A program made the position numbers and the translations under genes. Shown here in pieces: positions 4,014 to 32,740 of a DNA stretch of 64,000 bases (positions are counted from its first letter, which is position 1; each line of letters begins with the position of its first letter). The notes under the pieces are model-generated. The model was not told the DNA's origin. It did no database searches and saw nothing but the letters and a program-made list of their open reading frames with translations. The DNA is taken from the IMG/VR virus record IMGVR_UViG_3300037042_006844, positions 239,565 to 303,564 of that record; one strand, 5' to 3'.

Positions 4014-4042
4014 ATTCTACCGTATTGTTGTGTGGATGTCAA
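4014..4042 (-). promoter_or_regulatory. Sigma70-type promoter of the clamp gene (near-leaderless)
   Basis: TTGACA-N17-TAGAAT, 8 nt before ATG 4005. Confidence 0.7.
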
Positions 4043-4446
4043 CTGAATTGAAAAAATTCAGATGTGTGTGTATTTATTGTGACTTTCTCGCTGATACATG
4101 GTGTGCCGTCCGATAGGAACAGATCAGTGGGAGAGATATAAAAATTGTTGATGGCATAATCTGCATATGCCACAGTGCGCATTTGATAGTAAACCATGAC
4201 GTTGCTTTCGTCATTGGTGCGAAACTCAATGTAATACACTTTCGGATCGCTCAATCGAAACAGTTGCGAACGGGGGATGTAAAGGTTTTGTTGGTTAAGT
4301 TGAGTTTTTGTGAATTCAACGTATGGTCCACGTTGCCCAATTACGACGCGTTCGTATTTGTCCGCTATAAGGGTGCCAGATTTTGTGTATAGATTGATTT
4401 TACACCCATCTTCAAAAATATTCAATAACTCGCTATCTTTTTTCAT
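4039..4446 (-). CDS. Hypothetical phage protein
   Basis: 135 aa ORF in operon orientation; its ATG abuts an IS left end. Confidence 0.7.
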   Translation of the reverse strand: MKKDSELLNIFEDGCKINLYTKSGTLIADKYERVVIGQRGPYVEFTKTQLNQQNLYIPRSQLFRLSDPKVYYIEFRTNDESNVMVYYQMRTVAYADYAINNFYISPTDLFLSDGTPCISEKVTINTHTSEFFQFS

Positions 4447-4510
4447 AGTTTTGGAGGAAGGAAACCTCTTCGGCTTTAGCCAAGAGGAGGAATTCCGACC
4501 ACTTCTTAAT

Positions 4511-4539
4511 ATCCTATACTAGGGTCAACCGAAAGTCAA
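4511..4539 (-). promoter_or_regulatory. Outward-facing promoter inside IS copy 1
   Basis: TTGACT-N17-TAGGAT. Confidence 0.65.
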
Positions 4540-4546
4540 TACGAAA

Positions 4547-4726
4547 GTGAATGCTCCCAAGGTCTAAAGACCTTGGGCGTCTGTGTTAAGTTGCCTTAAC
4601 AAAAGAGTCCATTCCGACTCTCAAAATGTTTCGTGCTGCGTTAAGGTCTCGTCCAATGTTAAGATTACAAATAGGACATTTGTGCTGTCTCTCCGACAAC
4701 TCCTTCTTAACTATGGTTCCGCACCC
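4547..4726 (-). pseudogene. tnpB: tnpB 3' fragment plus family-B right end
   Basis: 4586-4726 translates GCGTIVKKELSERQHKCPICNLNIGRDLNAARNILRVGMDSFVKAT*, closely matching the C-terminus of TnpB at 18309; followed by hairpin cccaaggtctttagaccttggg and agcatTCAC. Confidence 0.9.
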
Positions 4727-4759
4727 CTACGTCTTTAGCGTAGGTGTGGTTGACATATG

Positions 4760-17317: not shown

Positions 17318-18317
17318 ACATAAATACGCAATTGGAGTCCATGTCATGTTTTATGAAATTAATATGGTATCGACATACATTGATGGGTTGTTGAACATGT
17401 TGAGCACCGTCGAAAACAAAGAAACCGTGTATCTGGATTTTGCGTTTAACGTGTCACAATTTTTCGAAAAAATCGACACAGCACAAATTAGCAAAAAAGA
17501 ACTGATTGCTCGCTTCTATGCCGACATGTCCCGTTTATCAGGGCATCTACACCAAAACGTCAGAATTATTGACAACGATGATGATTGGTATACTCAAACC
17601 AGTTACCGTCGAGAATTCAATGCCAACTATTGCAACAAAGTTGATATACTGATGTGGGGTGAAACGGACAGTTGCTTTCCAAAAGAAGCGTTTATGGCAT
17701 TGGAATCACTAGTTCCGAGCGTGAACAATTTATCAGTATATAGGTTTACCGCATGTTTCGCGGATCGTAAAATGTGGGACAGCAGTTGGGACTGCACTGT
17801 GCATCCTAATTTTATCGATCATGTTTATGACGACAATGACGTTGACAACGTAAATCAAGCCAAATCTAGCATTCCAATTAAAATAATGAATGCCATCAAT
17901 GCAACCATCGATGACCTACAAATCACCGTATTGCGAGAACCAAAAATTGACGGCAGCTGTTTTGTTATCAGCAGCGATTTGGTGAGAAGTGGAGTGAACA
18001 TTCCAGGTTGTTTCATTCATAACGACGATGAAAGTTTTGCGTTCATTGCGAAAAAACTAATGGGCACCAAATATGTGCAATATGTATTCAAGAATTTGTT
18101 GAAAATTCATGCTCGCAGATGCCCTGATAAACGAGCATTTGTTCGTGGAGAAAATAACAATAGGGGTTTTTGCGGTAAAGAAAAAGGCGAATGGTGGACG
18201 TTGTTCAAAGAACTCTCCCAAAAAAATATGAACGTATTGACCAGTGGGGACGGGAAATTTCTGACATATCAAGATTTCAAATCCAAATTGAACGATGTGA
18301 ATGCTCCCCTACCCTAA
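17307..18317 (+). CDS. Putative glycosyltransferase-like protein; last residues supplied by IS end
   Basis: GETD, IDGS, NDDE motifs in glycan island; pre-insertion end reconstructs as ...NDVK*. Confidence 0.6.
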   Translation: MILKHKYAIGVHVMFYEINMVSTYIDGLLNMLSTVENKETVYLDFAFNVSQFFEKIDTAQISKKELIARFYADMSRLSGHLHQNVRIIDNDDDWYTQTSYRREFNANYCNKVDILMWGETDSCFPKEAFMALESLVPSVNNLSVYRFTACFADRKMWDSSWDCTVHPNFIDHVYDDNDVDNVNQAKSSIPIKIMNAINATIDDLQITVLREPKIDGSCFVISSDLVRSGVNIPGCFIHNDDESFAFIAKKLMGTKYVQYVFKNLLKIHARRCPDKRAFVRGENNNRGFCGKEKGEWWTLFKELSQKNMNVLTSGDGKFLTYQDFKSKLNDVNAPLP

Positions 18318-19560
18318 AGGGATAGGGGCTTCTATGCTTCTTTTGGAAGCAAAAGAGTCCATTCCGACTCTCAAAATGTTTCGTGCAGCATTTAAGTCCC
18401 GTCCAATGTCCAATCCACAAAGATTACATTTGTGTTGTCTATCAGAGAGTTTCTTTGTCTCAATGTTGCCACAACCAGAACACATCTGACTCGTATAGGC
18501 AGGATTTACGTCATTCACTTCACAGCCAGCTTCTACCGCTTTACTATGTAGCATTTGTCTAAACGTAGTCCATCCTGAGTCTAATATGCTCTTATTCAAA
18601 CTTCGCCAATTGTCATTCAACATCTGACTTGGTTTAATATCCTCTACACAAATATGTGTGTATTCGCTCACGAACTTCTTGCTCAACTTGTGTAGGAAAT
18701 CTTTTCGTTGGTTCTTAATCTTACAGTGAACCGACACCAATGCTCTCTTGGTCTTAATCTTCTGCTTATCATCCCTTGGTTTCTTTTTTAGTTTGGAATA
18801 CTTACCTTGGATTTTGGAAAGTTTCTCGGAAGATTGTCGTAAGAAATGAGGATGAGAAATGGTTGTCCCATCGGAACAAGTGGCAAAGTCAATACATCCA
18901 ACGTCAATTCCAACTGCTCGCTTCCACTTCTTCACTTCTGGTTTAATCTCAACCTCACAAGAGAAGATAGCATACCAGTGGTTGCCTTCACGTTTAATGG
19001 TCAAGGTCTTAATCTTGCCTTCCATTTTACGATGGAGGTTAATCCGAACATCACCAATCTTGGACATCCATAATTTCTTCTTTCCTATCTTAAATCCTGT
19101 TTGTGGAAAGGTGAATGAGTCGTATCGGTCATATGACTTAAATCTTGGAAATCCTGCTTTGCCTGTCTTATCCTTCAATCTTCGGAAGAAACCAAGATAG
19201 GCAAGGTCAACTCTAGCAGATACATTTTGGAGGATTTGTGAATGGACTGGCGTTTTCAGTTTCATCTTTTTAATCACTTTACAACAATCAAAATGAGTGA
19301 GTGTCTTCTTGGTTTTCTCATAGTGGTCGTTTCGCTTCTCAAGGAGTTGGTTATAGACGTAGCGACAAGTTTCTCTCGTCTGTTCAAGACGGGTCAACGT
19401 TCCTCCTTTGGGAGACAACCTAAACTTGTAGTTTCGTTTTACATTCACAGACATACATATCATTGACTTTAAGGAAAATGTTATTTTATTTTTATTTCCT
19501 TAATATGGTCGTCATTCATCCCCTTGGCTAAAGCCGAAGGGGCTTTCTGACTCCAAGGAT
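18297..19560 (-). mobile_element. IS200/IS605 (tnpB-only, IS1341-like) family-B element, target TTAC
   Basis: Left: TTAC|atccttggagtcagAAAG-ccccttcggctttagccaagggg. Right: GAAG-cccctatccctttagggtagggg-agcatTCAC. Empty site restores GAT GTA AAA TAA. Confidence 0.92.
18309..19454 (-). CDS. tnpB: RNA-guided endonuclease TnpB (start could be 19463/19454/19448)
   Basis: YKFRL..CRYVYN HTH, GIDVG, CVEDI, TSQMCSGCG..CNLCG, RDLNAARNI. Confidence 0.95.
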   Translation of the reverse strand: MSVNVKRNYKFRLSPKGGTLTRLEQTRETCRYVYNQLLEKRNDHYEKTKKTLTHFDCCKVIKKMKLKTPVHSQILQNVSARVDLAYLGFFRRLKDKTGKAGFPRFKSYDRYDSFTFPQTGFKIGKKKLWMSKIGDVRINLHRKMEGKIKTLTIKREGNHWYAIFSCEVEIKPEVKKWKRAVGIDVGCIDFATCSDGTTISHPHFLRQSSEKLSKIQGKYSKLKKKPRDDKQKIKTKRALVSVHCKIKNQRKDFLHKLSKKFVSEYTHICVEDIKPSQMLNDNWRSLNKSILDSGWTTFRQMLHSKAVEAGCEVNDVNPAYTSQMCSGCGNIETKKLSDRQHKCNLCGLDIGRDLNAARNILRVGMDSFASKRSIEAPIPLG

Positions 19561-19608: not shown

Positions 19609-20571
19609 ATGGAAATTTGCTTTATCACGCCAAACAATCACTTCGGGCTTTTGCCCCGAACGTTTGATAATTTGCGCACCGAGTTTGCTTGGCAAATAGC
19701 ACTACAAGCAACCCATTACCCAATCCAACACATATTGGATCTTCAAGCATATGGATATGGTCCAGACACATATGATGTCGGCATCATCATTCTGCCAAAA
19801 AAGCTAGAAACCATAAACACAAACGCTCTATTATTGCGAGCGAAACGCGTGTGCAAAAAACTGGCTGTGATGCAGGAAGGTCCGGCGTGGTATTTTCAAG
19901 ATTATGACTGTGCGAACCAGATCAATTATCTAAACTTCCTTGGTGAAATGGATTTCTTGCTGGTTCACAATGCGGCAGATATTCCATATTTCAGAGGCAT
20001 TTTCAAAAAACCCACATTCCATCTACCATCTTTAATGCTCACAGATGGCATTGAAAGTGTTAAACGTGAAGATACGGGAAACGTTATCATTGGAGGAAAT
20101 TTTTGCAGTTGGTATGGTGGCATCGACAGTTATTTCGTGGCTCAAGCATTCAAACAACCAATCTATGCTCCATCGATGGGACGCAAAATCGCCAATGAGG
20201 ATCAATTCCCAAACTTAACGCATCTGCCGTTTCTGTGGTGGAAAGATTGGATGCACCAACTTTCCAAATTTCATGTCGGTGTGCATTTGATGCGAACTCA
20301 TGCCGCCGGAACCTTTGCGCTCAACTGTGCATATTGGGGAATCCCTTGCATTGGTTACAGAGGATTGGACACCCAAGAAACACTTCACCCATTGTTGACG
20401 GTGAATATTGGCGATATAGAAAAAGCCAACGATCTGGCAATAAAATTACGTGACGATAAACACTTTTATAATTTTGCTTCGGAATGCGCCGTAGATAATT
20501 ATACTGTGTATTACAAAGAATCTGTTTGGTTACGATATTGGGAAACAATATATGGACAAATCAAAAACTAA
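19609..20571 (+). CDS. Putative GT-B fold glycosyltransferase
   Basis: AAGTFALNCAYWGIPCIG resembles GT-B C-terminal motif; island context. Confidence 0.6.
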   Translation: MEICFITPNNHFGLLPRTFDNLRTEFAWQIALQATHYPIQHILDLQAYGYGPDTYDVGIIILPKKLETINTNALLLRAKRVCKKLAVMQEGPAWYFQDYDCANQINYLNFLGEMDFLLVHNAADIPYFRGIFKKPTFHLPSLMLTDGIESVKREDTGNVIIGGNFCSWYGGIDSYFVAQAFKQPIYAPSMGRKIANEDQFPNLTHLPFLWWKDWMHQLSKFHVGVHLMRTHAAGTFALNCAYWGIPCIGYRGLDTQETLHPLLTVNIGDIEKANDLAIKLRDDKHFYNFASECAVDNYTVYYKESVWLRYWETIYGQIKN

Positions 20572-26502: not shown

Positions 26503-26780
26503 CCGTTGGAAGCTATCAAGCATTCTATAACATGGTGAAAGATGACCAACCCGCCATTGGAAAGCCTCTTGGCGACTGTCTGCGTTCTTTGTCCGGCATT
26601 TGCGCATGTCGCAAACAGCAAAAAACTCAAAAATCCAACGAGTGTAACCAGCTTTACATTAACTTTGTAAAAACAAGTGGCGAAGCACTCAAAGAATACT
26701 TCGCCACGAAAACTACTGATGCTGAGATTTTATTTAGCCACGACTCGCATCATGAGATACTTAGACTGAAACTTAGGTAA
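26499..26780 (+). CDS. Hypothetical protein
   Basis: 93 aa, ATGA-coupled. Confidence 0.6.
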   Translation: MTVGSYQAFYNMVKDDQPAIGKPLGDCLRSLSGICACRKQQKTQKSNECNQLYINFVKTSGEALKEYFATKTTDAEILFSHDSHHEILRLKLR

Positions 26781-27435
26781 TCACTCCTATTGATTTGAGT
26801 GCTGTTTTTACGTGATCGATGATATACGGAGAGTTTCTCAATGATTCGGCAGTTGGACACTCATCGCTCACATCCACCCATTCAAACGCATAATCTGCTC
26901 TGGCTTTGACTTTTGGATTATTAAACTGTTCATGGTCGTTCGGTGCTGCGTCATATATTTTCACTGGAGTTGCGGTTGTAACGTGACGCTTGCTGGGTGC
27001 TGGACCCAATTTGAAACGAGTTATGTGAATCAATTTCCCCATCATTTTGTTTTGCACCCAGTAACACTCATCCTCTGGATAGCTATCATATCGAATATCT
27101 GTGATGATATCAAAATCAATCTCATTACTAACTGACGCTAGGTAATTAATTCGATCTTCTACTTTTTGGGTCCAATACTTACCATGCGTTAATTTTCGCA
27201 TCATGTCCCCATACGCAACCAATAGTGGACGAATGATATTTTTCTCCTTTGTATTTTCTGTGAATGCGGAGATTAGTGCTTTGTCAAAAATCAAATCTTT
27301 TAGATCACTTTTCAATTCGGTCGCCAATGCGTGTCGAGCAACCCTAAGACCACGTTCTTTGAGAATGTCGGCGGCGACAGTTGCAAACAAATCTTTGCCG
27401 CTTCTTGCAAGACCAGATATACCAATAATTTTCAT
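26773..27435 (-). CDS. Deoxynucleoside monophosphate kinase (T4 gp1-like)
   Basis: MKIIGISGLARSGKD P-loop, ITDIRY; true start 27435 (ORF-track extension is IS DNA). Confidence 0.85.
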   Translation of the reverse strand: MKIIGISGLARSGKDLFATVAADILKERGLRVARHALATELKSDLKDLIFDKALISAFTENTKEKNIIRPLLVAYGDMMRKLTHGKYWTQKVEDRINYLASVSNEIDFDIITDIRYDSYPEDECYWVQNKMMGKLIHITRFKLGPAPSKRHVTTATPVKIYDAAPNDHEQFNNPKVKARADYAFEWVDVSDECPTAESLRNSPYIIDHVKTALKSIGVIT

Positions 27436-27497
27436 ATTTTTGGAGGAAGGAAACCTCTTCGGCTTTAGCCAAGAGGAGGAATTCCGACCATTCAATT

Positions 27498-27527
27498 ATC
27501 TTAGCACAGTCTTCTTGGATTTGTCAA
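27498..27527 (-). promoter_or_regulatory. Outward-facing promoter inside IS copy 2
   Basis: TTGACA-N18-TAAGAT with TG extended -10. Confidence 0.6.
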
Positions 27528-27597
27528 CCACAAAAATAGTTTCTCTGTATGAAAGATTTTTTGTATCTTGGACGTTTTTAAGTGTATTTATATGTAG

Positions 27598-28758
27598 ATG
27601 AGCAAATTGACATACAACACAAAATTGATATTCAAGAGCGACGATGATAAAAATAATATCATTAAAATGCTTGAATCCCAACTGTTTGCATGGAATGAGT
27701 GCTCGAAAATCCAATTTACTCTTCCCAAAAACTCTATCATAGACCTGCATTCTAAGTTCTATTCTAGTTTTAGATTAAAAAATCCTAATATACCCTCCCA
27801 AGTCGTAATATCTGCCGAACAGTCAGTTCTGTCCTCGTTTAGATCGATTAAATCAAATAAGCAGAAGGTAAAAACTCCTCCGATTAAAAAGAATTTGTCA
27901 ATCCGACTTGATAAAAGGACATTCTCTTTTAAGAATGGGAAATTTAGCATAATAAGCCTTGGAAAGCGTATCAAATGTCATCCGCTAATCTTCCCCAAAC
28001 TTAAAGAGTATATGGATAAATATACATTTTGCGATCCACTTCTTTTCGTTCGAAACGGAGAAGTCCACATATCTTTAACATTTAATATTCCAGAAATTAA
28101 ATCTCAAAATAAACTTGCGGTTGGGGTCGATTTGGGGTGCGTTAACTTGGCGGCTACCAGTGAAGGAAGGCTGTATAAGGATAAATCATTTAACTCTAGG
28201 AAACGGCAATTGAGGTATCTTAAATCCGCTCTGAAATCGAAAGGCTCAAAGTCTTCCAGAAGGCATATTAATAAATTACATCATAAAGAACATAATATTA
28301 ATAAAAATTTGTCTCATAATTTAGCAAATAGGATCATTCAAGATACAGATGCCGACACGATTGTTCTTGAAAACCTCAAATCATTAAAAGTCAAAAAGCA
28401 TAAATATCAGAATAAAAATAGAATTTCTCAAATTCCAATTTTTGAATTGAGAAGAATAATTACCTATAAGGCACTCTTAAACGAGAAAACGGTTATTGTA
28501 GTAAATCCATCATACACAAGTCAAATTGACCATAGGACAGGCAAACTAGATGGCAAAAGAATTGGTGGTAGGTATATCGGAAAAGATGGTCAAATACTCC
28601 ATGCGGACGTAAATGCCGCTTGTAATATTGCCATTCGATCCAAACTCCCATGTTCAATAAAAAATTATTATACATGGCAGGCGACAGTCAATTCGCCAAT
28701 CGTATGTAAATCTTCTGGTTCGTCGGAAGTATTACAAGCACCTATCCCTTTAGGGTAG
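27598..28758 (+). CDS. tnpB: TnpB (zinc-finger cysteines absent)
   Basis: GVDLG, IVLENL, YTSQ, HADVNAACNI. Confidence 0.92.
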   Translation: MSKLTYNTKLIFKSDDDKNNIIKMLESQLFAWNECSKIQFTLPKNSIIDLHSKFYSSFRLKNPNIPSQVVISAEQSVLSSFRSIKSNKQKVKTPPIKKNLSIRLDKRTFSFKNGKFSIISLGKRIKCHPLIFPKLKEYMDKYTFCDPLLFVRNGEVHISLTFNIPEIKSQNKLAVGVDLGCVNLAATSEGRLYKDKSFNSRKRQLRYLKSALKSKGSKSSRRHINKLHHKEHNINKNLSHNLANRIIQDTDADTIVLENLKSLKVKKHKYQNKNRISQIPIFELRRIITYKALLNEKTVIVVNPSYTSQIDHRTGKLDGKRIGGRYIGKDGQILHADVNAACNIAIRSKLPCSIKNYYTWQATVNSPIVCKSSGSSEVLQAPIPLG

Positions 28759-28772
28759 GTGTTGTTGACGTG

Positions 28773-29255
28773 TTAACTTTCAAATAATTTTTCAATTTCC
28801 GTTTCTGAATATCCGAATGATGAAACCAAAGAAACCAGTTCAGTGGTTCCGCGTTCAGTCTGAATAAGTAGTTTGTAATAATCGGATGCATCACCACTAC
28901 CTATTTGAAAATTTTTGCATATGCAACTCAATACAGTTGCCTCCACATCTTTGTTGCTTTTTTTGATGTATGGATAGAACCTATAGTCTTTCGGAATACA
29001 TTTGATAAGCAATTGATAAAACTGTTTGTCTGGTAAAACTTCCATGTATTTTGAGATGTAAGAGATTTCCTCGATGATTTTCGAATCCATGCTCAATACA
29101 CGCAGAATCATAAACTTGTTGAAAGTTTTACGTTCAGCTTCCGAAAACGTATCGTAATAATCTGGACTTTGAGCTTGTCGTATGTGTTTTACGTGATCAA
29201 ATAACCCTCTGGTTCTAACTACGTCGTCTTTCGACAGTGTTCCTTTTCGTTTCAT
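28773..29255 (-). CDS. Clamp loader small subunit (T4 gp62-like)
   Basis: FNKFMILRVLSMD...QFYQLL..IPK...YIKK pattern. Confidence 0.65.
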   Translation of the reverse strand: MKRKGTLSKDDVVRTRGLFDHVKHIRQAQSPDYYDTFSEAERKTFNKFMILRVLSMDSKIIEEISYISKYMEVLPDKQFYQLLIKCIPKDYRFYPYIKKSNKDVEATVLSCICKNFQIGSGDASDYYKLLIQTERGTTELVSLVSSFGYSETEIEKLFES

Positions 29256-29634
29256 TGCTAGTCATTCTAACACGGCGTTTCAATTCCGCAAGGTCTTTAA
29301 TCATCTGGGTGCGTTCGGTGTTGATAAATTCAAATGCATCCGTTATAGTTTCGAAGATTTTTGTTGTTTCAGCTTTATGCCCTTCGATTCCCTTTGCATT
29401 TACCGTGTCGTTTGTATCGCACAATTGTTTGTGTGCTTCCAAATCTTTATGCAACCCCACCAAATCACTGTTAAATTGTGCCTCCATTGCTTTGGAAGCC
29501 TTATCCAATTGATTTTGTTGTTCAAACTTCGTCTGCATTGGTTTAATCCAACTGCGATAAACAAAGAAAAGCGTGGCTCCCAGTGATAGGAGCCACGCTG
29601 CAACAACAATTAGAATTGTTGTTTGTGCAGTCAT
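29215..29634 (-). CDS. Membrane-anchored coiled-coil protein
   Basis: N-terminal TM helix followed by heptad-rich region. Confidence 0.6.
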   Translation of the reverse strand: MTAQTTILIVVAAWLLSLGATLFFVYRSWIKPMQTKFEQQNQLDKASKAMEAQFNSDLVGLHKDLEAHKQLCDTNDTVNAKGIEGHKAETTKIFETITDAFEFINTERTQMIKDLAELKRRVRMTSNETKRNTVERRRS

Positions 29635-29642
29635 AGCTTGAG

Positions 29643-29846
29643 TTAGGCTTTATAACCTGCTGCAAGAACTTCACGCAGTGCTCGAATCTGGCGACCATTG
29701 AGATCGAGCCGAGTTTGCCCAGCGCGAAGCGTCAAACGTGCCGCCTTCTTGGTTCCGGGCATTGGGGTCGAGAGGTAAACTTCAACGCCAGTTGAATTGT
29801 GTCCGACGAATTTGGTCTTGTTCTTGCTATTCTTACGCGTATACAT
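29643..29846 (-). CDS. Small basic hypothetical protein
   Basis: 67 aa; A-rich leader and upstream TTGACA-N16-TAAATT. Confidence 0.6.
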   Translation of the reverse strand: MYTRKNSKNKTKFVGHNSTGVEVYLSTPMPGTKKAARLTLRAGQTRLDLNGRQIRALREVLAAGYKA

Positions 29847-29951
29847 ATGTATGTGTCCTTTAGTTTTGTGTTTTTTTGTTTTCGTTAGTTGTTCGCTAAC
29901 TTGATATCAATTTACACCCGAATCTTTGACTGTCAACAGGTTACACTTTTT

Positions 29952-30974
29952 TTAATTTTCGAGTGGCAACTCGCGCAGTAAATATTCATGACAGTTTTTA
30001 GCCATCTGAACATATGCATCGGAAAATTTGTTGGGCTTAGTTCCCTCTTGGAACAGAACGTGATTTTCAATCACCATTTCAAAAAAGTTTATAGCGTAAT
30101 CTTTGAGTTTGAATTCAAACTCCAAATCAACGTCGAGGTCCACAAATTCAACTGGGAATTTTAATGGCGTGTCGCGATGGCTACGCTTGTCGATACCAAA
30201 CTCACCTCTACTTTCACTATAATGAAACAACGGGCGATACTTGCCCCACGACGACATAGCCAACGCAACTGCATTTTTAGCAGAAAGATGACCTGGGTTG
30301 CATTTATGATGTAAATTGTCGTAAGTGATTGGTATGCCGATACGTTGATGAATATGCTCGTAAAGCTGCTCAACATTCCAACTATTGGGCTTGTCCTCGT
30401 TCTCCAGAACCAAACGACTCTGAACACCCTCAGAAAGCGTTTTATACGCCTCTATAAAGCGTTTGGCGATATCGGGGAGTGATCCCTTGAAACAATTCAT
30501 GTGAATGTTTATAGGGGCATTGTAAGAGCGCGGCAGGCCCATTCTGTCCATAAGCAAAGCGTGATGCTCCAATTCCACTAATGATTTGGCAGCTACAGAA
30601 GGGTTTGCGCTGGCTGGGACCACAAACTGGTCGGGGTGCATACTGCACCTGATACTGTTATTTGCAATAGTTTGCGCAATGTCTGCAAATGTGGCGTTGA
30701 TGAGTGCCTTGTCTGGAAGAACGTCGAAGCTAAGATTAGCATCTGGTAGAGTCGCTAAAGGAAACAGACTGCTGCTGATGCGATAGTTCCAATTATTGGC
30801 AATACAATGTTTAATCGTATCGTGCGTCAGATCCAAATTATTAACAACCCGACTACTTAATATCGATAATGCTTTGGTGCGCTCCAATGCCAAAAACCGT
30901 GTTTTGGTCATTGTGCTGGCTCTACGCCCAGATTTTTGCAGTTCGAGTGATATACAACAGAGACTTTTTTTCAT
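29952..30974 (-). CDS. uvsE: UV-damage endonuclease UvsE
   Basis: YRISSSLFP, SMHPDQF, INIH, LVLENED, YDNLHH, FHYS; true start 30974. Confidence 0.93.
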   Translation of the reverse strand: MKKSLCCISLELQKSGRRASTMTKTRFLALERTKALSILSSRVVNNLDLTHDTIKHCIANNWNYRISSSLFPLATLPDANLSFDVLPDKALINATFADIAQTIANNSIRCSMHPDQFVVPASANPSVAAKSLVELEHHALLMDRMGLPRSYNAPINIHMNCFKGSLPDIAKRFIEAYKTLSEGVQSRLVLENEDKPNSWNVEQLYEHIHQRIGIPITYDNLHHKCNPGHLSAKNAVALAMSSWGKYRPLFHYSESRGEFGIDKRSHRDTPLKFPVEFVDLDVDLEFEFKLKDYAINFFEMVIENHVLFQEGTKPNKFSDAYVQMAKNCHEYLLRELPLEN

Positions 30975-31036
30975 ATTTTTGGAGGAAGGAAACCTCTTCG
31001 GCTTTAGCCAAGAGGAGGAATTCCGACCATGCATTT

Positions 31037-31065
31037 AATATAATACATATTCTCCGATTTGTCAA
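31037..31065 (-). promoter_or_regulatory. Outward-facing promoter inside IS copy 3
   Basis: TTGACA-N17-TATATT. Confidence 0.7.
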
Positions 31066-31126
31066 CATTAAAAATATTTTTCATTATTTTTCAACTTTTT
31101 GTATTTCAAGTGTATACTTATATGAA

Positions 31127-32293
31127 GTGATAAGCTATAATACACAACTTTTAATGAAAACTCAAGATGACTTTGATAATCTCAAGTCAATTCTTGATAT
31201 GCATAAAATTGTGTTTAATTTCGCTTCAAATCTACAATTCAATGAATTAAAAAATAGTTTAGTTGTTTTACATTCAAAAGTCTATTACAATATTCGTAAA
31301 CAATATCCAAACATTCCATCTCAAGTCATAATCAAAGCTGAACAGGAATGCCTGTCAAGTTATAAAACTACTAAATCTAATAAACATAAATTGAAGAAGC
31401 CGATTGAGAAAAAGAATCTCTCAGTGAGATTGGATAAAAGACTTTATTCCAAAAATAAAGATGATAAATACTCTATTCGTATAACGTCTGCGGTTGGAAG
31501 ACAGTCGTATAAATTTGTAGTATATCACAAATTAAAAGAGTTGTTGGATAAGTATGAGTATGCGGACCCATTGATTTATGAAAATGGTGGCAAATTATTT
31601 ATATCATTTTGTTTTGATACTAAACCAAAAGACAAAATCAAGCAAAAATTAGCTTTAGGAGTTGATATCGGAATTCGTCGTAGTGTTGCTTGTAGCGACG
31701 GAAGAATCGTTATTGATAGAAAATTTAATGGTGACAAACGCAAGTTAAGGCATCTGAAAGATGCCCTAAAATCAAAAGGATCAAAGTCTACCAGAAGACA
31801 TCTTAGTAAATTGAGACGCAAAGAGCACAACAAAAACAAAAACCAAACTCATCTTGTTGCCAATGAAGTTTTGAGAACAAAAGCAGACACCATCGTTCTT
31901 GAAAATCTAAAAGGCATAAAGAAAAAGAAACACAAATATCAAAATAAGCGTTCAATTGGACAAGTTCCAATGTTTGAATTTCGCAGAGTAATAACCTATA
32001 AGGCAGAGAACCAAGGTAAGACGGTTCTACTAGTTCGCCCTTATTACACATCACAAACTGATTGCGTAACTGGCAATCGTGAAGGTGAAAGAAGAGGTTG
32101 TAGATTTTACTCTAAGAATGGGCTTATTTATGATGCGGACATCAATGCTGCAATCAATATTGCAAAACTGTCCAAACTTCCCGTATCACAGACTAATTAT
32201 CTGACTTATGGGCAGGCACTCGTCAACGTGCCAATCGTATGTAAATCTTCTGCTAGTAGGGAAGTATTACAAGCCCCTATGGCTTTAGCCTAG
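31127..32293 (+). CDS. tnpB: TnpB (degenerate zinc finger); probable GTG start
   Basis: VISYNTQL aligns to LTYNTKL of copy 2; GVDIG, IVLENL, DADINAAINI. Confidence 0.92.
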   Translation: MISYNTQLLMKTQDDFDNLKSILDMHKIVFNFASNLQFNELKNSLVVLHSKVYYNIRKQYPNIPSQVIIKAEQECLSSYKTTKSNKHKLKKPIEKKNLSVRLDKRLYSKNKDDKYSIRITSAVGRQSYKFVVYHKLKELLDKYEYADPLIYENGGKLFISFCFDTKPKDKIKQKLALGVDIGIRRSVACSDGRIVIDRKFNGDKRKLRHLKDALKSKGSKSTRRHLSKLRRKEHNKNKNQTHLVANEVLRTKADTIVLENLKGIKKKKHKYQNKRSIGQVPMFEFRRVITYKAENQGKTVLLVRPYYTSQTDCVTGNREGERRGCRFYSKNGLIYDADINAAINIAKLSKLPVSQTNYLTYGQALVNVPIVCKSSASREVLQAPMALA

Positions 32294-32310
32294 GGGTAGT
32301 TGACTCTCCG

Positions 32311-32338
32311 AATATACCACGTTCTATAAAAATGTCAA
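32311..32338 (-). promoter_or_regulatory. Orphaned original uvsE promoter
   Basis: TTGACA-N16-TATATT; lies 6 nt from uvsE ATG once the IS is removed. Confidence 0.7.
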
Positions 32339-32740
32339 TTAGGCACTTCCGCTGATAAACGAGCCTGTGGCGCAACAATTAATGCCCAGAATAGGACAGA
32401 AATATCCCAGTAGTTTCCATGTTGCTGGACCCGCTGCCGTTTTGACCCAAGATGCCTTTTTATTGATGCCTTGAGCCAATACGTATGAAGTTTGTCTGGT
32501 GAGATTTGGAAATTGATCACTCAACGAATTGAAATCAGCGTCGCTATTGTTACGATAATAAATGGTGTTATCGTTTTTTATCAACAAATCCCCAGGGTCG
32601 CCAGTGAAAATACCGTTCGGACTCGCATCGACTTCTTTGTTTGACCTAGCCTTTTGGGCAAACTGCGTCAATTTAGATACGAACTGTTGGTATCGATCTG
32701 CGAACGTATAGTTTACTGATGGATTTTTACTTTTGCCCAT
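32339..32740 (-). CDS. Hypothetical protein
   Basis: 133 aa; CTATTTATA motif upstream. Confidence 0.6.
   Translation of the reverse strand: MGKSKNPSVNYTFADRYQQFVSKLTQFAQKARSNKEVDASPNGIFTGDPGDLLIKNDNTIYYRNNSDADFNSLSDQFPNLTRQTSYVLAQGINKKASWVKTAAGPATWKLLGYFCPILGINCCATGSFISGSA

What the first reader, a model, noticed from the sequence alone, without database searches (positions are those of the whole stretch)
27436..27503. Leaderless 8-codon uORF inside the IS left end
Seen: 6 nt after the outward -10 box in copies 2 and 3 (8 nt, GTG, in copy 1) is ATG GTC GGA ATT CCT CCT CTT GGC TAA (MVGIPPLG*). It stops in the hairpin loop 29 nt before the phage gene's ATG. The family-B left end has the equivalent MVVIHPLG* (19505-19531). 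The 6-nt spacing matches the phage's own leaderless genes. Inference: a ribosome loading at the leaderless AUG could melt the left-end hairpin and reinitiate on the SD-less downstream gene. Caveat: the 'CCA' may be conserved for DNA pairing of the end instead.
Basis: inference. Interest (0 to 1): 0.6.

Follow-up and report, generated by a model that had tools for sequence, protein, structure and literature searches.

The report
Mini-ORF inside a transposon's left end
The 8-codon reading frame is real and sits at an outward-facing promoter in the left end of TnpB transposons that landed exactly on the start codons of jumbo-phage genes, but 58 related insertions show its letters are fixed by the transposon's DNA fold, not by a need to be translated.

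Summary
On the minus strand, 27491..27465 reads ATG-7 codons-TAA. It lies 6 nt after a TTGACA-N18-TAAGAT promoter, stops in a hairpin loop, and ends 29 nt before the gene's ATG. Copies lie at 31030..31004 (ATG) and 4502..4476 (GTG), with a family-B counterpart at 19505-19531.

The context is IS200/IS605-type, tnpB-only elements in a 303.5-kb uncultured T4-like jumbo phage. Lake-metagenome contigs carry the precise empty sites, so the ATG belongs to the phage and the element sits directly against it (target TTCAT, the reverse complement of ATGAA). At copy 3 the element separates a natively leaderless gene from its own promoter.

The phage has about 50 leaderless genes with the same -10/ATG geometry and almost no Shine-Dalgarno sites. 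An SD-less downstream gene is therefore normal here.

Across 58 independent insertions (40 left-end haplotypes), the start triplet is canonical in only 65-74%. The next codon is invariant in 39 of 40. Genes follow start-less ends just as often. The ORF lies entirely inside a covarying extended hairpin, and its stop is the loop shared with the right end.

Best reading: an outward-promoter cassette whose mini-ORF is probably translated but incidental. A ribosome-loading role is not excluded (about 0.17).

The parts
27465..27491 (-). 8-codon mini-ORF (MVGIPPLG*), copy 2, with its stop in the hairpin loop
   Evidence: direct reading
27498..27527 (-). Outward promoter P_out of copy 2: TTGACA-N18-(TG)cTAAGAT, 6 nt before the mini-ORF ATG
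   Evidence: The same block is conserved in other phage contigs. P_out is recognisable at 46 of 58 sites.
27454..27476 (.). Main left-end hairpin: 6 bp, a bulged base, 3 bp, and a 4-nt loop (TTTA on the element's top strand). It has the same shape as the right-end hairpin.
   Evidence: (5 pairs with compensatory changes)
27436..27491 (+). Whole structured left end. The top strand folds as TGG..GGAA..[hairpin]..TTCC..CCA. The mini-ORF is the complement of its 3' half.
   Evidence: DNA fold, (-9.7 kcal/mol, z -2.6). Covariation at pairs 8-51 and 9-50.
27436..28769 (+). IS200/IS605-type tnpB-only element, copy 2 (1334 bp; boundaries uncertain by 1 nt)
   Evidence: Empty-site joint 27436|28771 in contigs of three runs; right-end sequence
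27598..28758 (+). tnpB of copy 2 (386 aa). A TATTTATA motif lies 5 nt upstream (27585-27592).
   Evidence: Pfam OrfB_IS605 and Cas12f1-like TNB
26773..27435 (-). Phage dNMP-kinase-like gene whose ATG directly abuts the left end
   Evidence: DNMK; the P-loop starts at residue 5; empty site
28773..29255 (-). Clamp-loader-A-like gene. In the empty allele its stop is 3 nt from the kinase ATG.
30975..32304 (+). Element copy 3 (1330 bp). Its TnpB is only 53% identical to that of copy 2, yet the left end is 97-100% identical.
   Evidence: Joint 30974|32305
31004..31030 (-). Mini-ORF of copy 3
31037..31065 (-). P_out of copy 3: TTGACA-N17-TATATT, 6 nt before the ATG
29952..30974 (-). UvdE-like UV endonuclease gene abutting copy 3
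   Evidence: 1.3e-39
32311..32338 (-). Native promoter of the UvdE gene, displaced by copy 3. In the empty allele its -10 lies 6 nt before the ATG, which makes the gene natively leaderless.
4447..4754 (+). Copy 1: a roughly 308-bp tnpB-less derivative with left and right ends, holding an inverted 3' remnant of a family-B-like tnpB
4476..4502 (-). Mini-ORF of copy 1 with a GTG start, 8 nt after TAGGAT (promoter-like site at 4539..4511). It abuts the gene at 4039-4446.
19505..19531 (+). Family-B left-end counterpart (MVVIHPLG*). The extended helix has GTCA:TGAC where family A has GGAA:TTCC.
18309..19463 (-). tnpB of family B (384 aa, with a zinc finger)

Best explanation
The mini-ORF is a by-product of how the left end (LE) of a phage-adapted IS200/IS605-type tnpB element is built. 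SHOWN: the elements insert immediately 3' of TTCAT. This is the reverse complement of ATGAA, the commonest start of this phage's genes. The LE therefore abuts a phage start codon and cuts the gene off from its own promoter (copy 3) or from its upstream cistron (copy 2). SHOWN: the outermost ~57 nt of the LE form a conserved, covarying extended hairpin of the kind a Y1 transposase recognises. Directly inside it lies a conserved outward sigma-70-type promoter. INFERRED: this promoter re-supplies transcription to the displaced gene, starting at about the A that precedes the conserved TGGTCGG block. INFERRED: the gene is then translated as the phage's other internal genes are, without SD, from a G-poor, A-rich leader with T at -1 that the LE terminus provides. 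SHOWN: the letters of the ORF are set by the DNA fold. Its TG lies in the TGG:CCA foot stem, codons 3-8 in the helices, and its TAA is the hairpin loop shared with the right end. INFERRED: where the triplet is ATG, ribosomes of this leaderless-prone system probably do translate the 8 codons, but this is not required for expression of the gene.
For: Element identity: TnpB domains and isostructural bulged hairpins at both ends.
Precise empty sites without target duplication occur in lake-metagenome contigs (joints 27436|28771 and 30974|32305).
ATGAA or GTGAA follows the LE at all 58 insertion sites used in the census (this was also a selection criterion there).
Gene-start bias: 7 of 8 copies in this genome abut ORFs of 135-377 codons. 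Only 6% of the 1131 ATGAA sites are such starts.
Native leaderless promoters lie 6 nt outside the right end at copy 3 and in L017 and L054.
P_out is recognisable at 46 of 58 sites. It is retained in two derivatives that lost the hairpin (L010, L014).
No SD genome-wide: strong SD at 5.5% of starts against 1.9% background, and T at -1 in 178 of 291 starts.
Start triplet canonical in only 26 of 40 haplotypes, while the next codon is kept in 39 of 40.
Genes follow start-less LEs in 12 of 16 cases against 26 of 42.
Six 49-nt LE/RE hybrid scars keep the hairpin and leader in front of a gene start without any mini-ORF.
Covariation: 96.4% of cells paired, with 7 pairs changed on both sides, including two in the helix that overlaps codons 3-4.
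Against: The start triplet is still ATG/GTG/TTG at three quarters of sites.
24 of 26 haplotypes with a canonical start keep exactly 8 codons, and one 3-nt insertion (L034) preserves the frame.
The 6-nt spacing is the mode of the phage's genuine leaderless genes, so translation of the mini-ORF is likely and a modest enhancing role cannot be excluded.
The haplotypes are related by descent, so the counts are not independent events.
It is unknown whether genes behind start-less ends are expressed equally well.
No TSS or RNA data exist. No TnpA is present to test the DNA-fold requirement.
Confidence: 0.6

Rival explanations
1. The leaderless AUG is a selected ribosome-loading pad. A 70S ribosome translates 8 codons, opens the hairpin, terminates in the loop, then scans 29 nt and reinitiates on the SD-less phage gene.
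For: The geometry is identical to about 50 genuine leaderless genes of the phage. ATG/GTG/TTG is present at 43 of 58 sites, and the 8-codon frame is kept in 24 of 26 haplotypes with a canonical start. 5'-terminal AUGs on leadered E. coli mRNAs bind 70S ribosomes, and some influence the downstream cistron (PMC4965119). The predicted 5' UTR is stably folded (-20.3 kcal/mol).
Against: The start is lost in 14 of 40 haplotypes, along at least three separate routes (AAG, ATA, AAT/ACG). Flanking bases stay invariant. Genes follow start-less ends as often as others. Hybrid scars keep the hairpin before a gene start without any mini-ORF. The foot of the hairpin is 18 nt from the gene ATG, so it need not be melted. 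SD-free internal starts with gaps of 16-120 nt and no promoter are common in this phage. The family-B copy has neither leaderless geometry nor a gene to reinitiate on.
Confidence: 0.17
2. Attenuator or terminator reading. The hairpin plus the following U/C-rich tract stops transcription coming through the element, and translation of the mini-ORF across the 5' arm relieves it.
For: A 9-bp GC-rich stem is followed by UUUCCUUCC. The stop codon in the loop would place a ribosome over the 3' arm.
Against: The terminator scan does not call this site. The tract has only 5 U in 9 nt. The same hairpin is explained by the covarying transposon-end fold and has an isostructural twin at the right end. The losses of the start codon listed above apply here too.
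Confidence: 0.05
3. N-terminal extension. The frame running through the left end is open and in phase with the gene in copies 2 and 3, so the gene could start at an upstream TTG or ATG.
For: the ORF listing reports ORFs at 26773..27495 (TTG start) and 29952..31034 (ATG start).
Against: These starts lie 2-3 nt after the -10 box, upstream of any plausible P_out TSS. The spacer between the left-end fold and the gene ATG varies by 1-3 nt among homologues, so the phase is not conserved. The empty alleles show that the native proteins start at the abutting ATG.
Confidence: 0.03
4. The promoter-like hexamers are not active outward promoters. The displaced genes would then be expressed only by read-through from upstream phage promoters, and the mini-ORF would be an internal, untranslated triplet run.
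For: Consensus matches are not proof. Promoter-like sites are only about 1.5-fold enriched over shuffles in this AT-rich region (27 against 18.1). No RNA data exist.
Against: The -35 TTGACA and a TAnnnT box recur at a fixed position at 46 of 58 sites, with varied spacer sequences. They survive in derivatives that lost the hairpin. They match the consensus that precedes about 50 phage genes.
Confidence: 0.12

Closest known systems
IS200/IS605-family tnpB-only (IS1341-type) insertion sequences with TnpB/omega-RNA
   Same: A TnpB with OrfB_IS605 and TNB domains. Subterminal imperfect hairpins instead of terminal inverted repeats. Insertion 3' of a fixed pentanucleotide without target duplication. 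A tnpB reading frame that runs into the right-end hairpin.
   Different: The elements reside in lytic-type jumbo-phage genomes, with no Y1 TnpA in the record. The target TTCAT places them on start codons. The left end carries a conserved outward promoter. The left end is 97-100% conserved between TnpBs that are only 42-53% identical, while a 73%-identical TnpB (L011) has an unrelated left end. This suggests that ends are exchanged as modules.
Outward-facing promoters of insertion sequences (for example IS10 pOUT, ISAba1, IS1/IS2/IS3 types; from my own knowledge and the review PMC9330008 listed)
   Same: A promoter near an element end reads out into the neighbouring gene.
   Different: Those cases usually switch on silent or resistance genes by chance. 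Here the promoter appears to be a constant, conserved part of the end. It compensates for an insertion that always severs the gene from its own signals.
5'-terminal uAUG mini-ORFs on leadered bacterial mRNAs (Beck, Fleming and Janssen 2016, PMC4965119) and leaderless short ORFs in mycobacteria (PMC4633059)
   Same: An AUG at the predicted 5' end of an mRNA that also carries a downstream cistron, with a potential for 70S loading.
   Different: Here the downstream gene has no SD. The AUG is embedded in a transposon-end fold. Comparative data show that it is dispensable.
IS200 left-end hairpin (from my own knowledge: it blocks impinging transcription and sequesters the tnpA ribosome-binding site)
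   Same: A left-end hairpin in the same superfamily that also affects gene expression.
   Different: IS200's hairpin insulates the element from outside transcription. Here transcription is sent outward, and the hairpin lies inside the 5' UTR of the host gene.

Membership tests
IS200/IS605 family, tnpB-only element | TnpB (OrfB_IS605 RuvC-like plus TNB domain) reading frame | tested here: met
   PF01385 and PF07282 above their cut-offs for both family A and family B
IS200/IS605 family, tnpB-only element | Subterminal imperfect hairpins at both ends, and no terminal inverted repeats | tested here: met
   left-end and right-end hairpins share 6 bp, a bulge, 3 bp and a TTTA loop, with compensatory changes in 5 stem pairs
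IS200/IS605 family, tnpB-only element | Insertion 3' of a fixed short target, with precise presence/absence and no target duplication | tested here: met
   empty sites in 3 runs; TTCAT or TTCAC flank at 58 sites
IS200/IS605 family, tnpB-only element | Y1 (HUH) transposase TnpA available for mobility | tested here: not met
   no PF01797 match in the 303.5-kb record (89% complete). The elements are non-autonomous or rely on a host TnpA.
IS200/IS605 family, tnpB-only element | Omega-RNA encoded at the 3' end of tnpB and the right end | tested here: inconclusive
   no Rfam family reaches its threshold. The conserved right-end block at 28676-28769 and 32211-32304 is compatible with one, but was not modelled.
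IS outward promoter (P_out) | -35 and -10 hexamers oriented outward next to the element end, conserved among copies | tested here: met
   (46 of 58 sites)
IS outward promoter (P_out) | A mapped transcript start and dependence of the neighbouring gene on it | not testable with these tools
   none of the 20 runs that hold this DNA is on record as RNA
Functional leaderless 5'-uORF | Start codon at the transcript's 5' end | tested here: inconclusive
   The geometry (-10 plus 6 nt) equals that of the phage's leaderless genes. The TSS is not mapped.
Functional leaderless 5'-uORF | Start codon and frame conserved among homologous ends more than their surroundings | tested here: not met
   canonical start in 26 of 40 haplotypes, against 39 of 40 for the next codon
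Functional leaderless 5'-uORF | Downstream expression depends on the uORF | tested here: inconclusive
   Indirect only: gene-like ORFs follow start-less ends in 12 of 16 cases, against 26 of 42 for ends with a start. No expression data.
Termination-reinitiation (translational coupling) | Upstream stop overlapping or within a few nt of the downstream start | tested here: not met
   The stop-to-start distance is 29 nt, and varies from 29 to 32 nt among homologues.
Intrinsic terminator or attenuator | GC-rich hairpin followed directly by a U-run | tested here: not met
   the site is not called; the tract is UUUCCUUCC

The most novel reading that the evidence does not exclude
The left end is an evolved, portable 'expression adaptor' for genomes that rely on leaderless mRNAs. 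The element necessarily turns a leaderless gene into an internal one. It would therefore carry its own leaderless mini-cistron, which loads 70S ribosomes at the new 5' end and hands them to the displaced, SD-less start codon 29 nt downstream. Natural start-less variants would then be weaker alleles. If so, this would be the first transposon end shown to supply translation initiation as well as transcription.
Probability: 0.15. Interest if true: 0.75.

Novelty: new variant of a known kind. Interest (0 to 1): 0.45.

Why it matters
The mini-ORF alone is probably incidental. The system around it is instructive.

These are RNA-guided-nuclease (TnpB) transposons that live in virulent-type jumbo phages. 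They land exactly on start codons because their target is the reverse complement of ATGAA. They appear to neutralise the damage with a built-in outward promoter and an SD-free leader.

Natural populations hold both filled and empty alleles. This offers a tractable case for how a selfish element stays tolerable in a gene-dense genome. It could also show how TnpB-driven homing might operate between co-infecting phages.

The phage itself has about 50 sigma-70-type leaderless genes, a second promoter-proximal motif that is also leaderless, and almost no SD sites. It is therefore a useful natural system for SD-independent and leaderless translation, where the 70S-loading idea could be tested directly.

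Tried and rejected
1. Near and distant DNA searches of isolate phages with the element and with the 100-nt left end found nothing. TnpB protein against isolate phages gave only matches of 27% identity or less.
No true left end and no TnpB lay next to any of the 120 hits. L204 may be a distant end type; I did not follow it.
3. Host search: PolB is closest (39.5%) to Microcystis phage Mel-JY01. The left-end pattern was not found in 401 sampled cyanobacterial genomes. The host remains unknown.
4. RNA evidence: none of the 20 runs that hold this DNA is RNA, so neither a TSS nor expression could be checked.
5. Rfam gave nothing meaningful for the left end, the right end or an omega-RNA.
6. The N-terminal-extension reading was rejected because the phase is not conserved.
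7. The similarity between the mini-ORF's ...PPLG* and the TnpB C-termini ...PIPLG* was considered and rejected as a consequence of the related hairpin sequences read in different frames.
8. Literature searches found no description of an outward promoter or mini-ORF in IS605-family left ends. Absence from that library is not proof.

The large protein searches, structure prediction and complex prediction were not used, because no claim depended on them. No alternative genetic code was used.

Full report
**1. What is at the coordinates**

The finding lies on the minus strand.
- Reading 27491 down to 27465 gives ATG GTC GGA ATT CCT CCT CTT GGC TAA.
- The same 27 nt occur at 31030..31004. A GTG version is at 4502..4476. 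That is three matches against none in 100 shuffles.
- The stop sits in the four-base loop of a bulged 9-bp hairpin.
- Twenty-nine bases separate the stop from the ATG of the next minus-strand gene (27435..27433).
- A TTGACA-N18-TAAGAT site ends 6 nt before the ATG. Copy 3 has TTGACA-N17-TATATT at the same distance. Copy 1 has TTGACT-N17-TAGGAT 8 nt before its GTG.
- The family-B counterpart at 19505-19531 is as described.

**2. What the surrounding object is**

The window is the last 64 kb of a 303,564-bp uncultured virus record. It has T4-like replication genes: family-B polymerase, clamp loader, dNMP kinase and UvdE. Its closest isolate is Microcystis phage Mel-JY01, at only 39.5% PolB identity. 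The host is unknown.

The repeats are the left ends (LE) of IS200/IS605-type elements that carry only tnpB.
- The tnpB genes are at 27598-28758, about 31127-32293, and (family B) 19463-18309. All three match OrfB_IS605 and the TNB domain.
- No Y1 transposase is encoded in the record.
- The genome holds eight family-A left ends. Three have a full tnpB. Two are 270-310-bp derivatives without tnpB, and window copy 1 is one of these; it also holds an inverted remnant of a B-like tnpB. One is a solo left end with its promoter. One has the top of the hairpin deleted. One is a 49-nt LE/RE hybrid.

**3. Boundaries, target and mobility**

Logan contigs of lake-water and other metagenomes were laid on 26700-32400. 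They contain the same phage without the elements.
- An 18.5-kb contig joins 27436 to 28771, skipping 1334 bases. It also joins 30974 to 32305, skipping 1330 bases.
- The first joint is seen in three runs and the second in two.

Three things follow.
- The elements are polymorphic insertions.
- The abutting ATG belongs to the phage gene.
- There is no target duplication.

On the element's top strand the flank is always TTCAT (rarely TTCAC). This is the reverse complement of ATGAA, and it holds in all 58 independent insertions collected from viral and metagenome contigs. The census also selected for this flank.

In this genome, 7 of 8 left ends abut ORFs of 135-377 codons. Only about 6% of the 1131 ATGAA sites are such gene starts. 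Across all sites, 38 of 58 abut gene-like ORFs.

The empty allele at copy 3 reads TTGACA-N16-TGgTATATT, then six bases, then ATG. The UvdE gene is therefore natively leaderless, and the element sits exactly between its +1 ATG and its promoter. L017 and L054 show the same arrangement. At copy 2 the empty allele has the clamp-loader stop, three bases, then the kinase ATG.

**4. Translation and transcription habits of this phage**

- ATGs that open long ORFs pile up 6-9 nt downstream of TTGACA-N16-18-(TG)TAnnnT sites: 17, 10, 6 and 12 cases, against 0-3 at most other distances. This gives about 50 leaderless genes.
- A second motif, (C)TATTTAT(A), lies 5-8 nt before many other ATGs, including that of tnpB itself.
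- Shine-Dalgarno motifs are essentially absent. Strong SD occurs at 5.5% of starts against 1.9% background. The start context is A-rich and G-poor, with T at -1 in 178 of 291 genes.
- Many internal genes start 16-120 nt after the previous stop, with A/C-rich leaders and no promoter.

An SD-less gene behind the left end is therefore the rule here, not a problem that needs a special solution. The last bases of the left end (CCAAAAAT and its variants) reproduce the genome's usual start context.

**5. Is the mini-ORF under selection?**

I collected homologous left ends with anchors that do not include the start triplet. The census holds 58 independent sites and 40 haplotypes.

| Measure | Result |
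|---|---|
| Start triplet by site | ATG 34, GTG 5, TTG 4, AAG 6, ATA 3, CTG 2, AAT 2, ACG 1, TAG 1 |
| Canonical start | 74% of sites, 65% of haplotypes |
| Following GTC kept | 39 of 40 haplotypes |
| P_out recognisable | 46 of 58 sites |
| Sites with the modal 6-nt spacing | 32, of which 11 lack a start codon |
| Gene-like ORF behind start-less ends | 12 of 16 |
| Gene-like ORF behind ends with a start | 26 of 42 |

All three positions of the triplet vary. Conservation therefore decays at the outer edge of the left-end block rather than peaking on the start codon.

Three further points argue against a required mini-ORF.
- One haplotype (L039) has a GAAA loop and so has no stop there.
- Two derivatives (L010, L014) lost the hairpin but kept the promoter in front of the gene.
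- Six LE/RE hybrid scars keep the hairpin and leader in front of a gene start with no mini-ORF at all.

In favour of the ORF:
- 24 of 26 haplotypes with a canonical start keep exactly 8 codons.
- One 3-nt insertion preserves the frame.

**6. What does constrain these bases**

The element's top strand folds, as single-stranded DNA, into TGG..GGAA..[hairpin]..TTCC..CCA (-9.7 kcal/mol, z -2.6). On an alignment of 24 distinct left ends this structure is paired in 96.4% of cells, and 7 pairs change on both sides. All slid controls and shuffles score far lower.
- The main stem shows five covarying pairs.
- The extended helix, which overlaps codons 3-4 of the mini-ORF, covaries at two pairs. Family B has GTCA:TGAC where family A has GGAA:TTCC, and L034 and L046 have C:G where the others have G:C.
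- The TG of the start codon lies in the TGG:CCA stem at the foot of the fold. That stem is the least conserved helix and shows no compensatory change, so its pairing is inferred only.
- The stop codon is the complement of the TTTA loop. The right-end hairpin has the same loop, bulge position and stem lengths.

This is the classical signature of recognition by an IS200/IS605 Y1 transposase. That link rests on established knowledge of IS608 and ISDra2, not on a test here.

The left end is 97-100% identical between elements whose TnpBs are only 42-53% identical. A 73%-identical TnpB (L011) has an unrelated left end without a mini-ORF. The ends therefore behave as exchangeable modules.

**7. Family B**

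- The only promoter-like site ends 12 nt before the ATG.
- The ATG abutting the end is followed immediately by TAA.
- The next gene, at 19609, has its own leaderless promoter.

The shared ATGGTCG thus reflects homology of the ends.

**8. Most likely mechanism**

- Shown: target choice, boundaries, the fold, conservation of the promoter motif, SD-free genome habits, and non-conservation of the start codon.
- Inferred: P_out fires at about the A before TGGTCGG. The displaced gene is then translated directly from the G-poor leader. The foot of the hairpin is 18 nt from the ATG, so it need not be melted.
- Probable but unproven: where the triplet is ATG, ribosomes translate the eight codons. 5'-terminal AUGs on leadered mRNAs bind 70S ribosomes in E. 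coli, and some affect the downstream cistron (PMC4965119).

I put about 0.6 on 'incidental mini-ORF within a promoter-bearing transposon end'.

**9. Novelty**

Outward promoters of insertion sequences, IS200/IS605 end hairpins and 5'-uAUG mini-ORFs are each known. I did not find the following combination described:
- tnpB elements resident in jumbo phages;
- a target that places them on start codons of leaderless genes;
- a conserved outward promoter as part of the end;
- recurrent 49-nt hybrid scars.

I rate it a new variant of a known kind.

**10. Limits**

- There are no RNA data, no host and no cognate TnpA.
- The haplotypes are related, so the counts overstate independence.
- Promoter calls are consensus matches only.
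- The copy 2 boundaries are ambiguous by one base. Alternatively, the empty allele differs by a G/A change at 28770.

Noticed in passing
G000 genome 216390-216438 (outside the window); L017:~600-660; L019; L072; L089; L105: Recurrent 49-nt 'solo hairpin' elements. Each has the 5' flank of the left end, one hybrid hairpin, and the 3' flank of the right end (...GTTGAC), and each sits between a gene ATG and its upstream sequence. They look like deletions between the identical loop regions of the two end hairpins, or like minimal mobile units.
   Followed up: partly
window 27585-27592, and upstream of many genes genome-wide (for example window 57604, 49897, 61366): A second promoter-like motif, (C)TATTTAT(A), lies 5-8 nt before the ATG of dozens of genes, including tnpB itself. 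It is probably a phage middle or late promoter that also gives leaderless mRNAs.
   Followed up: partly
window 28770: The empty-site contigs read A where the filled allele has G, immediately outside the right end of copy 2. Alternatively the boundaries shift by 1 nt. This is the first base of the presumed TnpB guide/target, so a change here could affect re-cutting of the empty site.
   Followed up: no
window 30974|32305 in run X9: One related population has three extra letters (CAT on the plus strand, that is, a second ATG) at the empty copy-3 site.
   Followed up: no
window 4447-4754: Copy 1 is a composite. It has a family-A left end and right end, with an inverted 3' fragment of a family-B-like tnpB (4598-4726; 77% aa identity to family B) and that fragment's hairpin (4556-4577) in between.
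   Followed up: partly
window ~2170-2220; genome 78107, 113355, 164122, 183420: A third repeated hairpin family (stem CCCACC.GC, loop TAAAG, followed by TTTTCTGCTCCC) occurs at least 5 times. It is once directly beside a degraded family-A left end, and once 14 nt from the ATG of the 723-aa gene at window 2169. It may be the end of another element family or a shared terminator.
   Followed up: no
L010:~2300-2500 and L014:~2330-2500: These are immobilised derivatives. The left-end hairpin is deleted (in L014 between the two TTCCTCC repeats), but the outward promoter is kept a short distance (about 10 nt in L010, about 24 nt in L014) before the neighbouring gene's ATG. This suggests the promoter has been domesticated.
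   Followed up: partly
window 27598-28758 and 31127-32293: Family-A TnpBs lack the CxxC...CxxC zinc-finger cysteines that family B has. Both families' reading frames run through the right-end hairpin and end ...PIPLG* or ...PMALA*.
   Followed up: no
L011:~700-915: A TnpB 73% identical to that of copy 2 carries a completely different left end (a different hairpin, no mini-ORF, target ...GTCAT). TnpBs of 42-53% identity share the family-A left end. The ends appear to be swapped between elements.
   Followed up: partly
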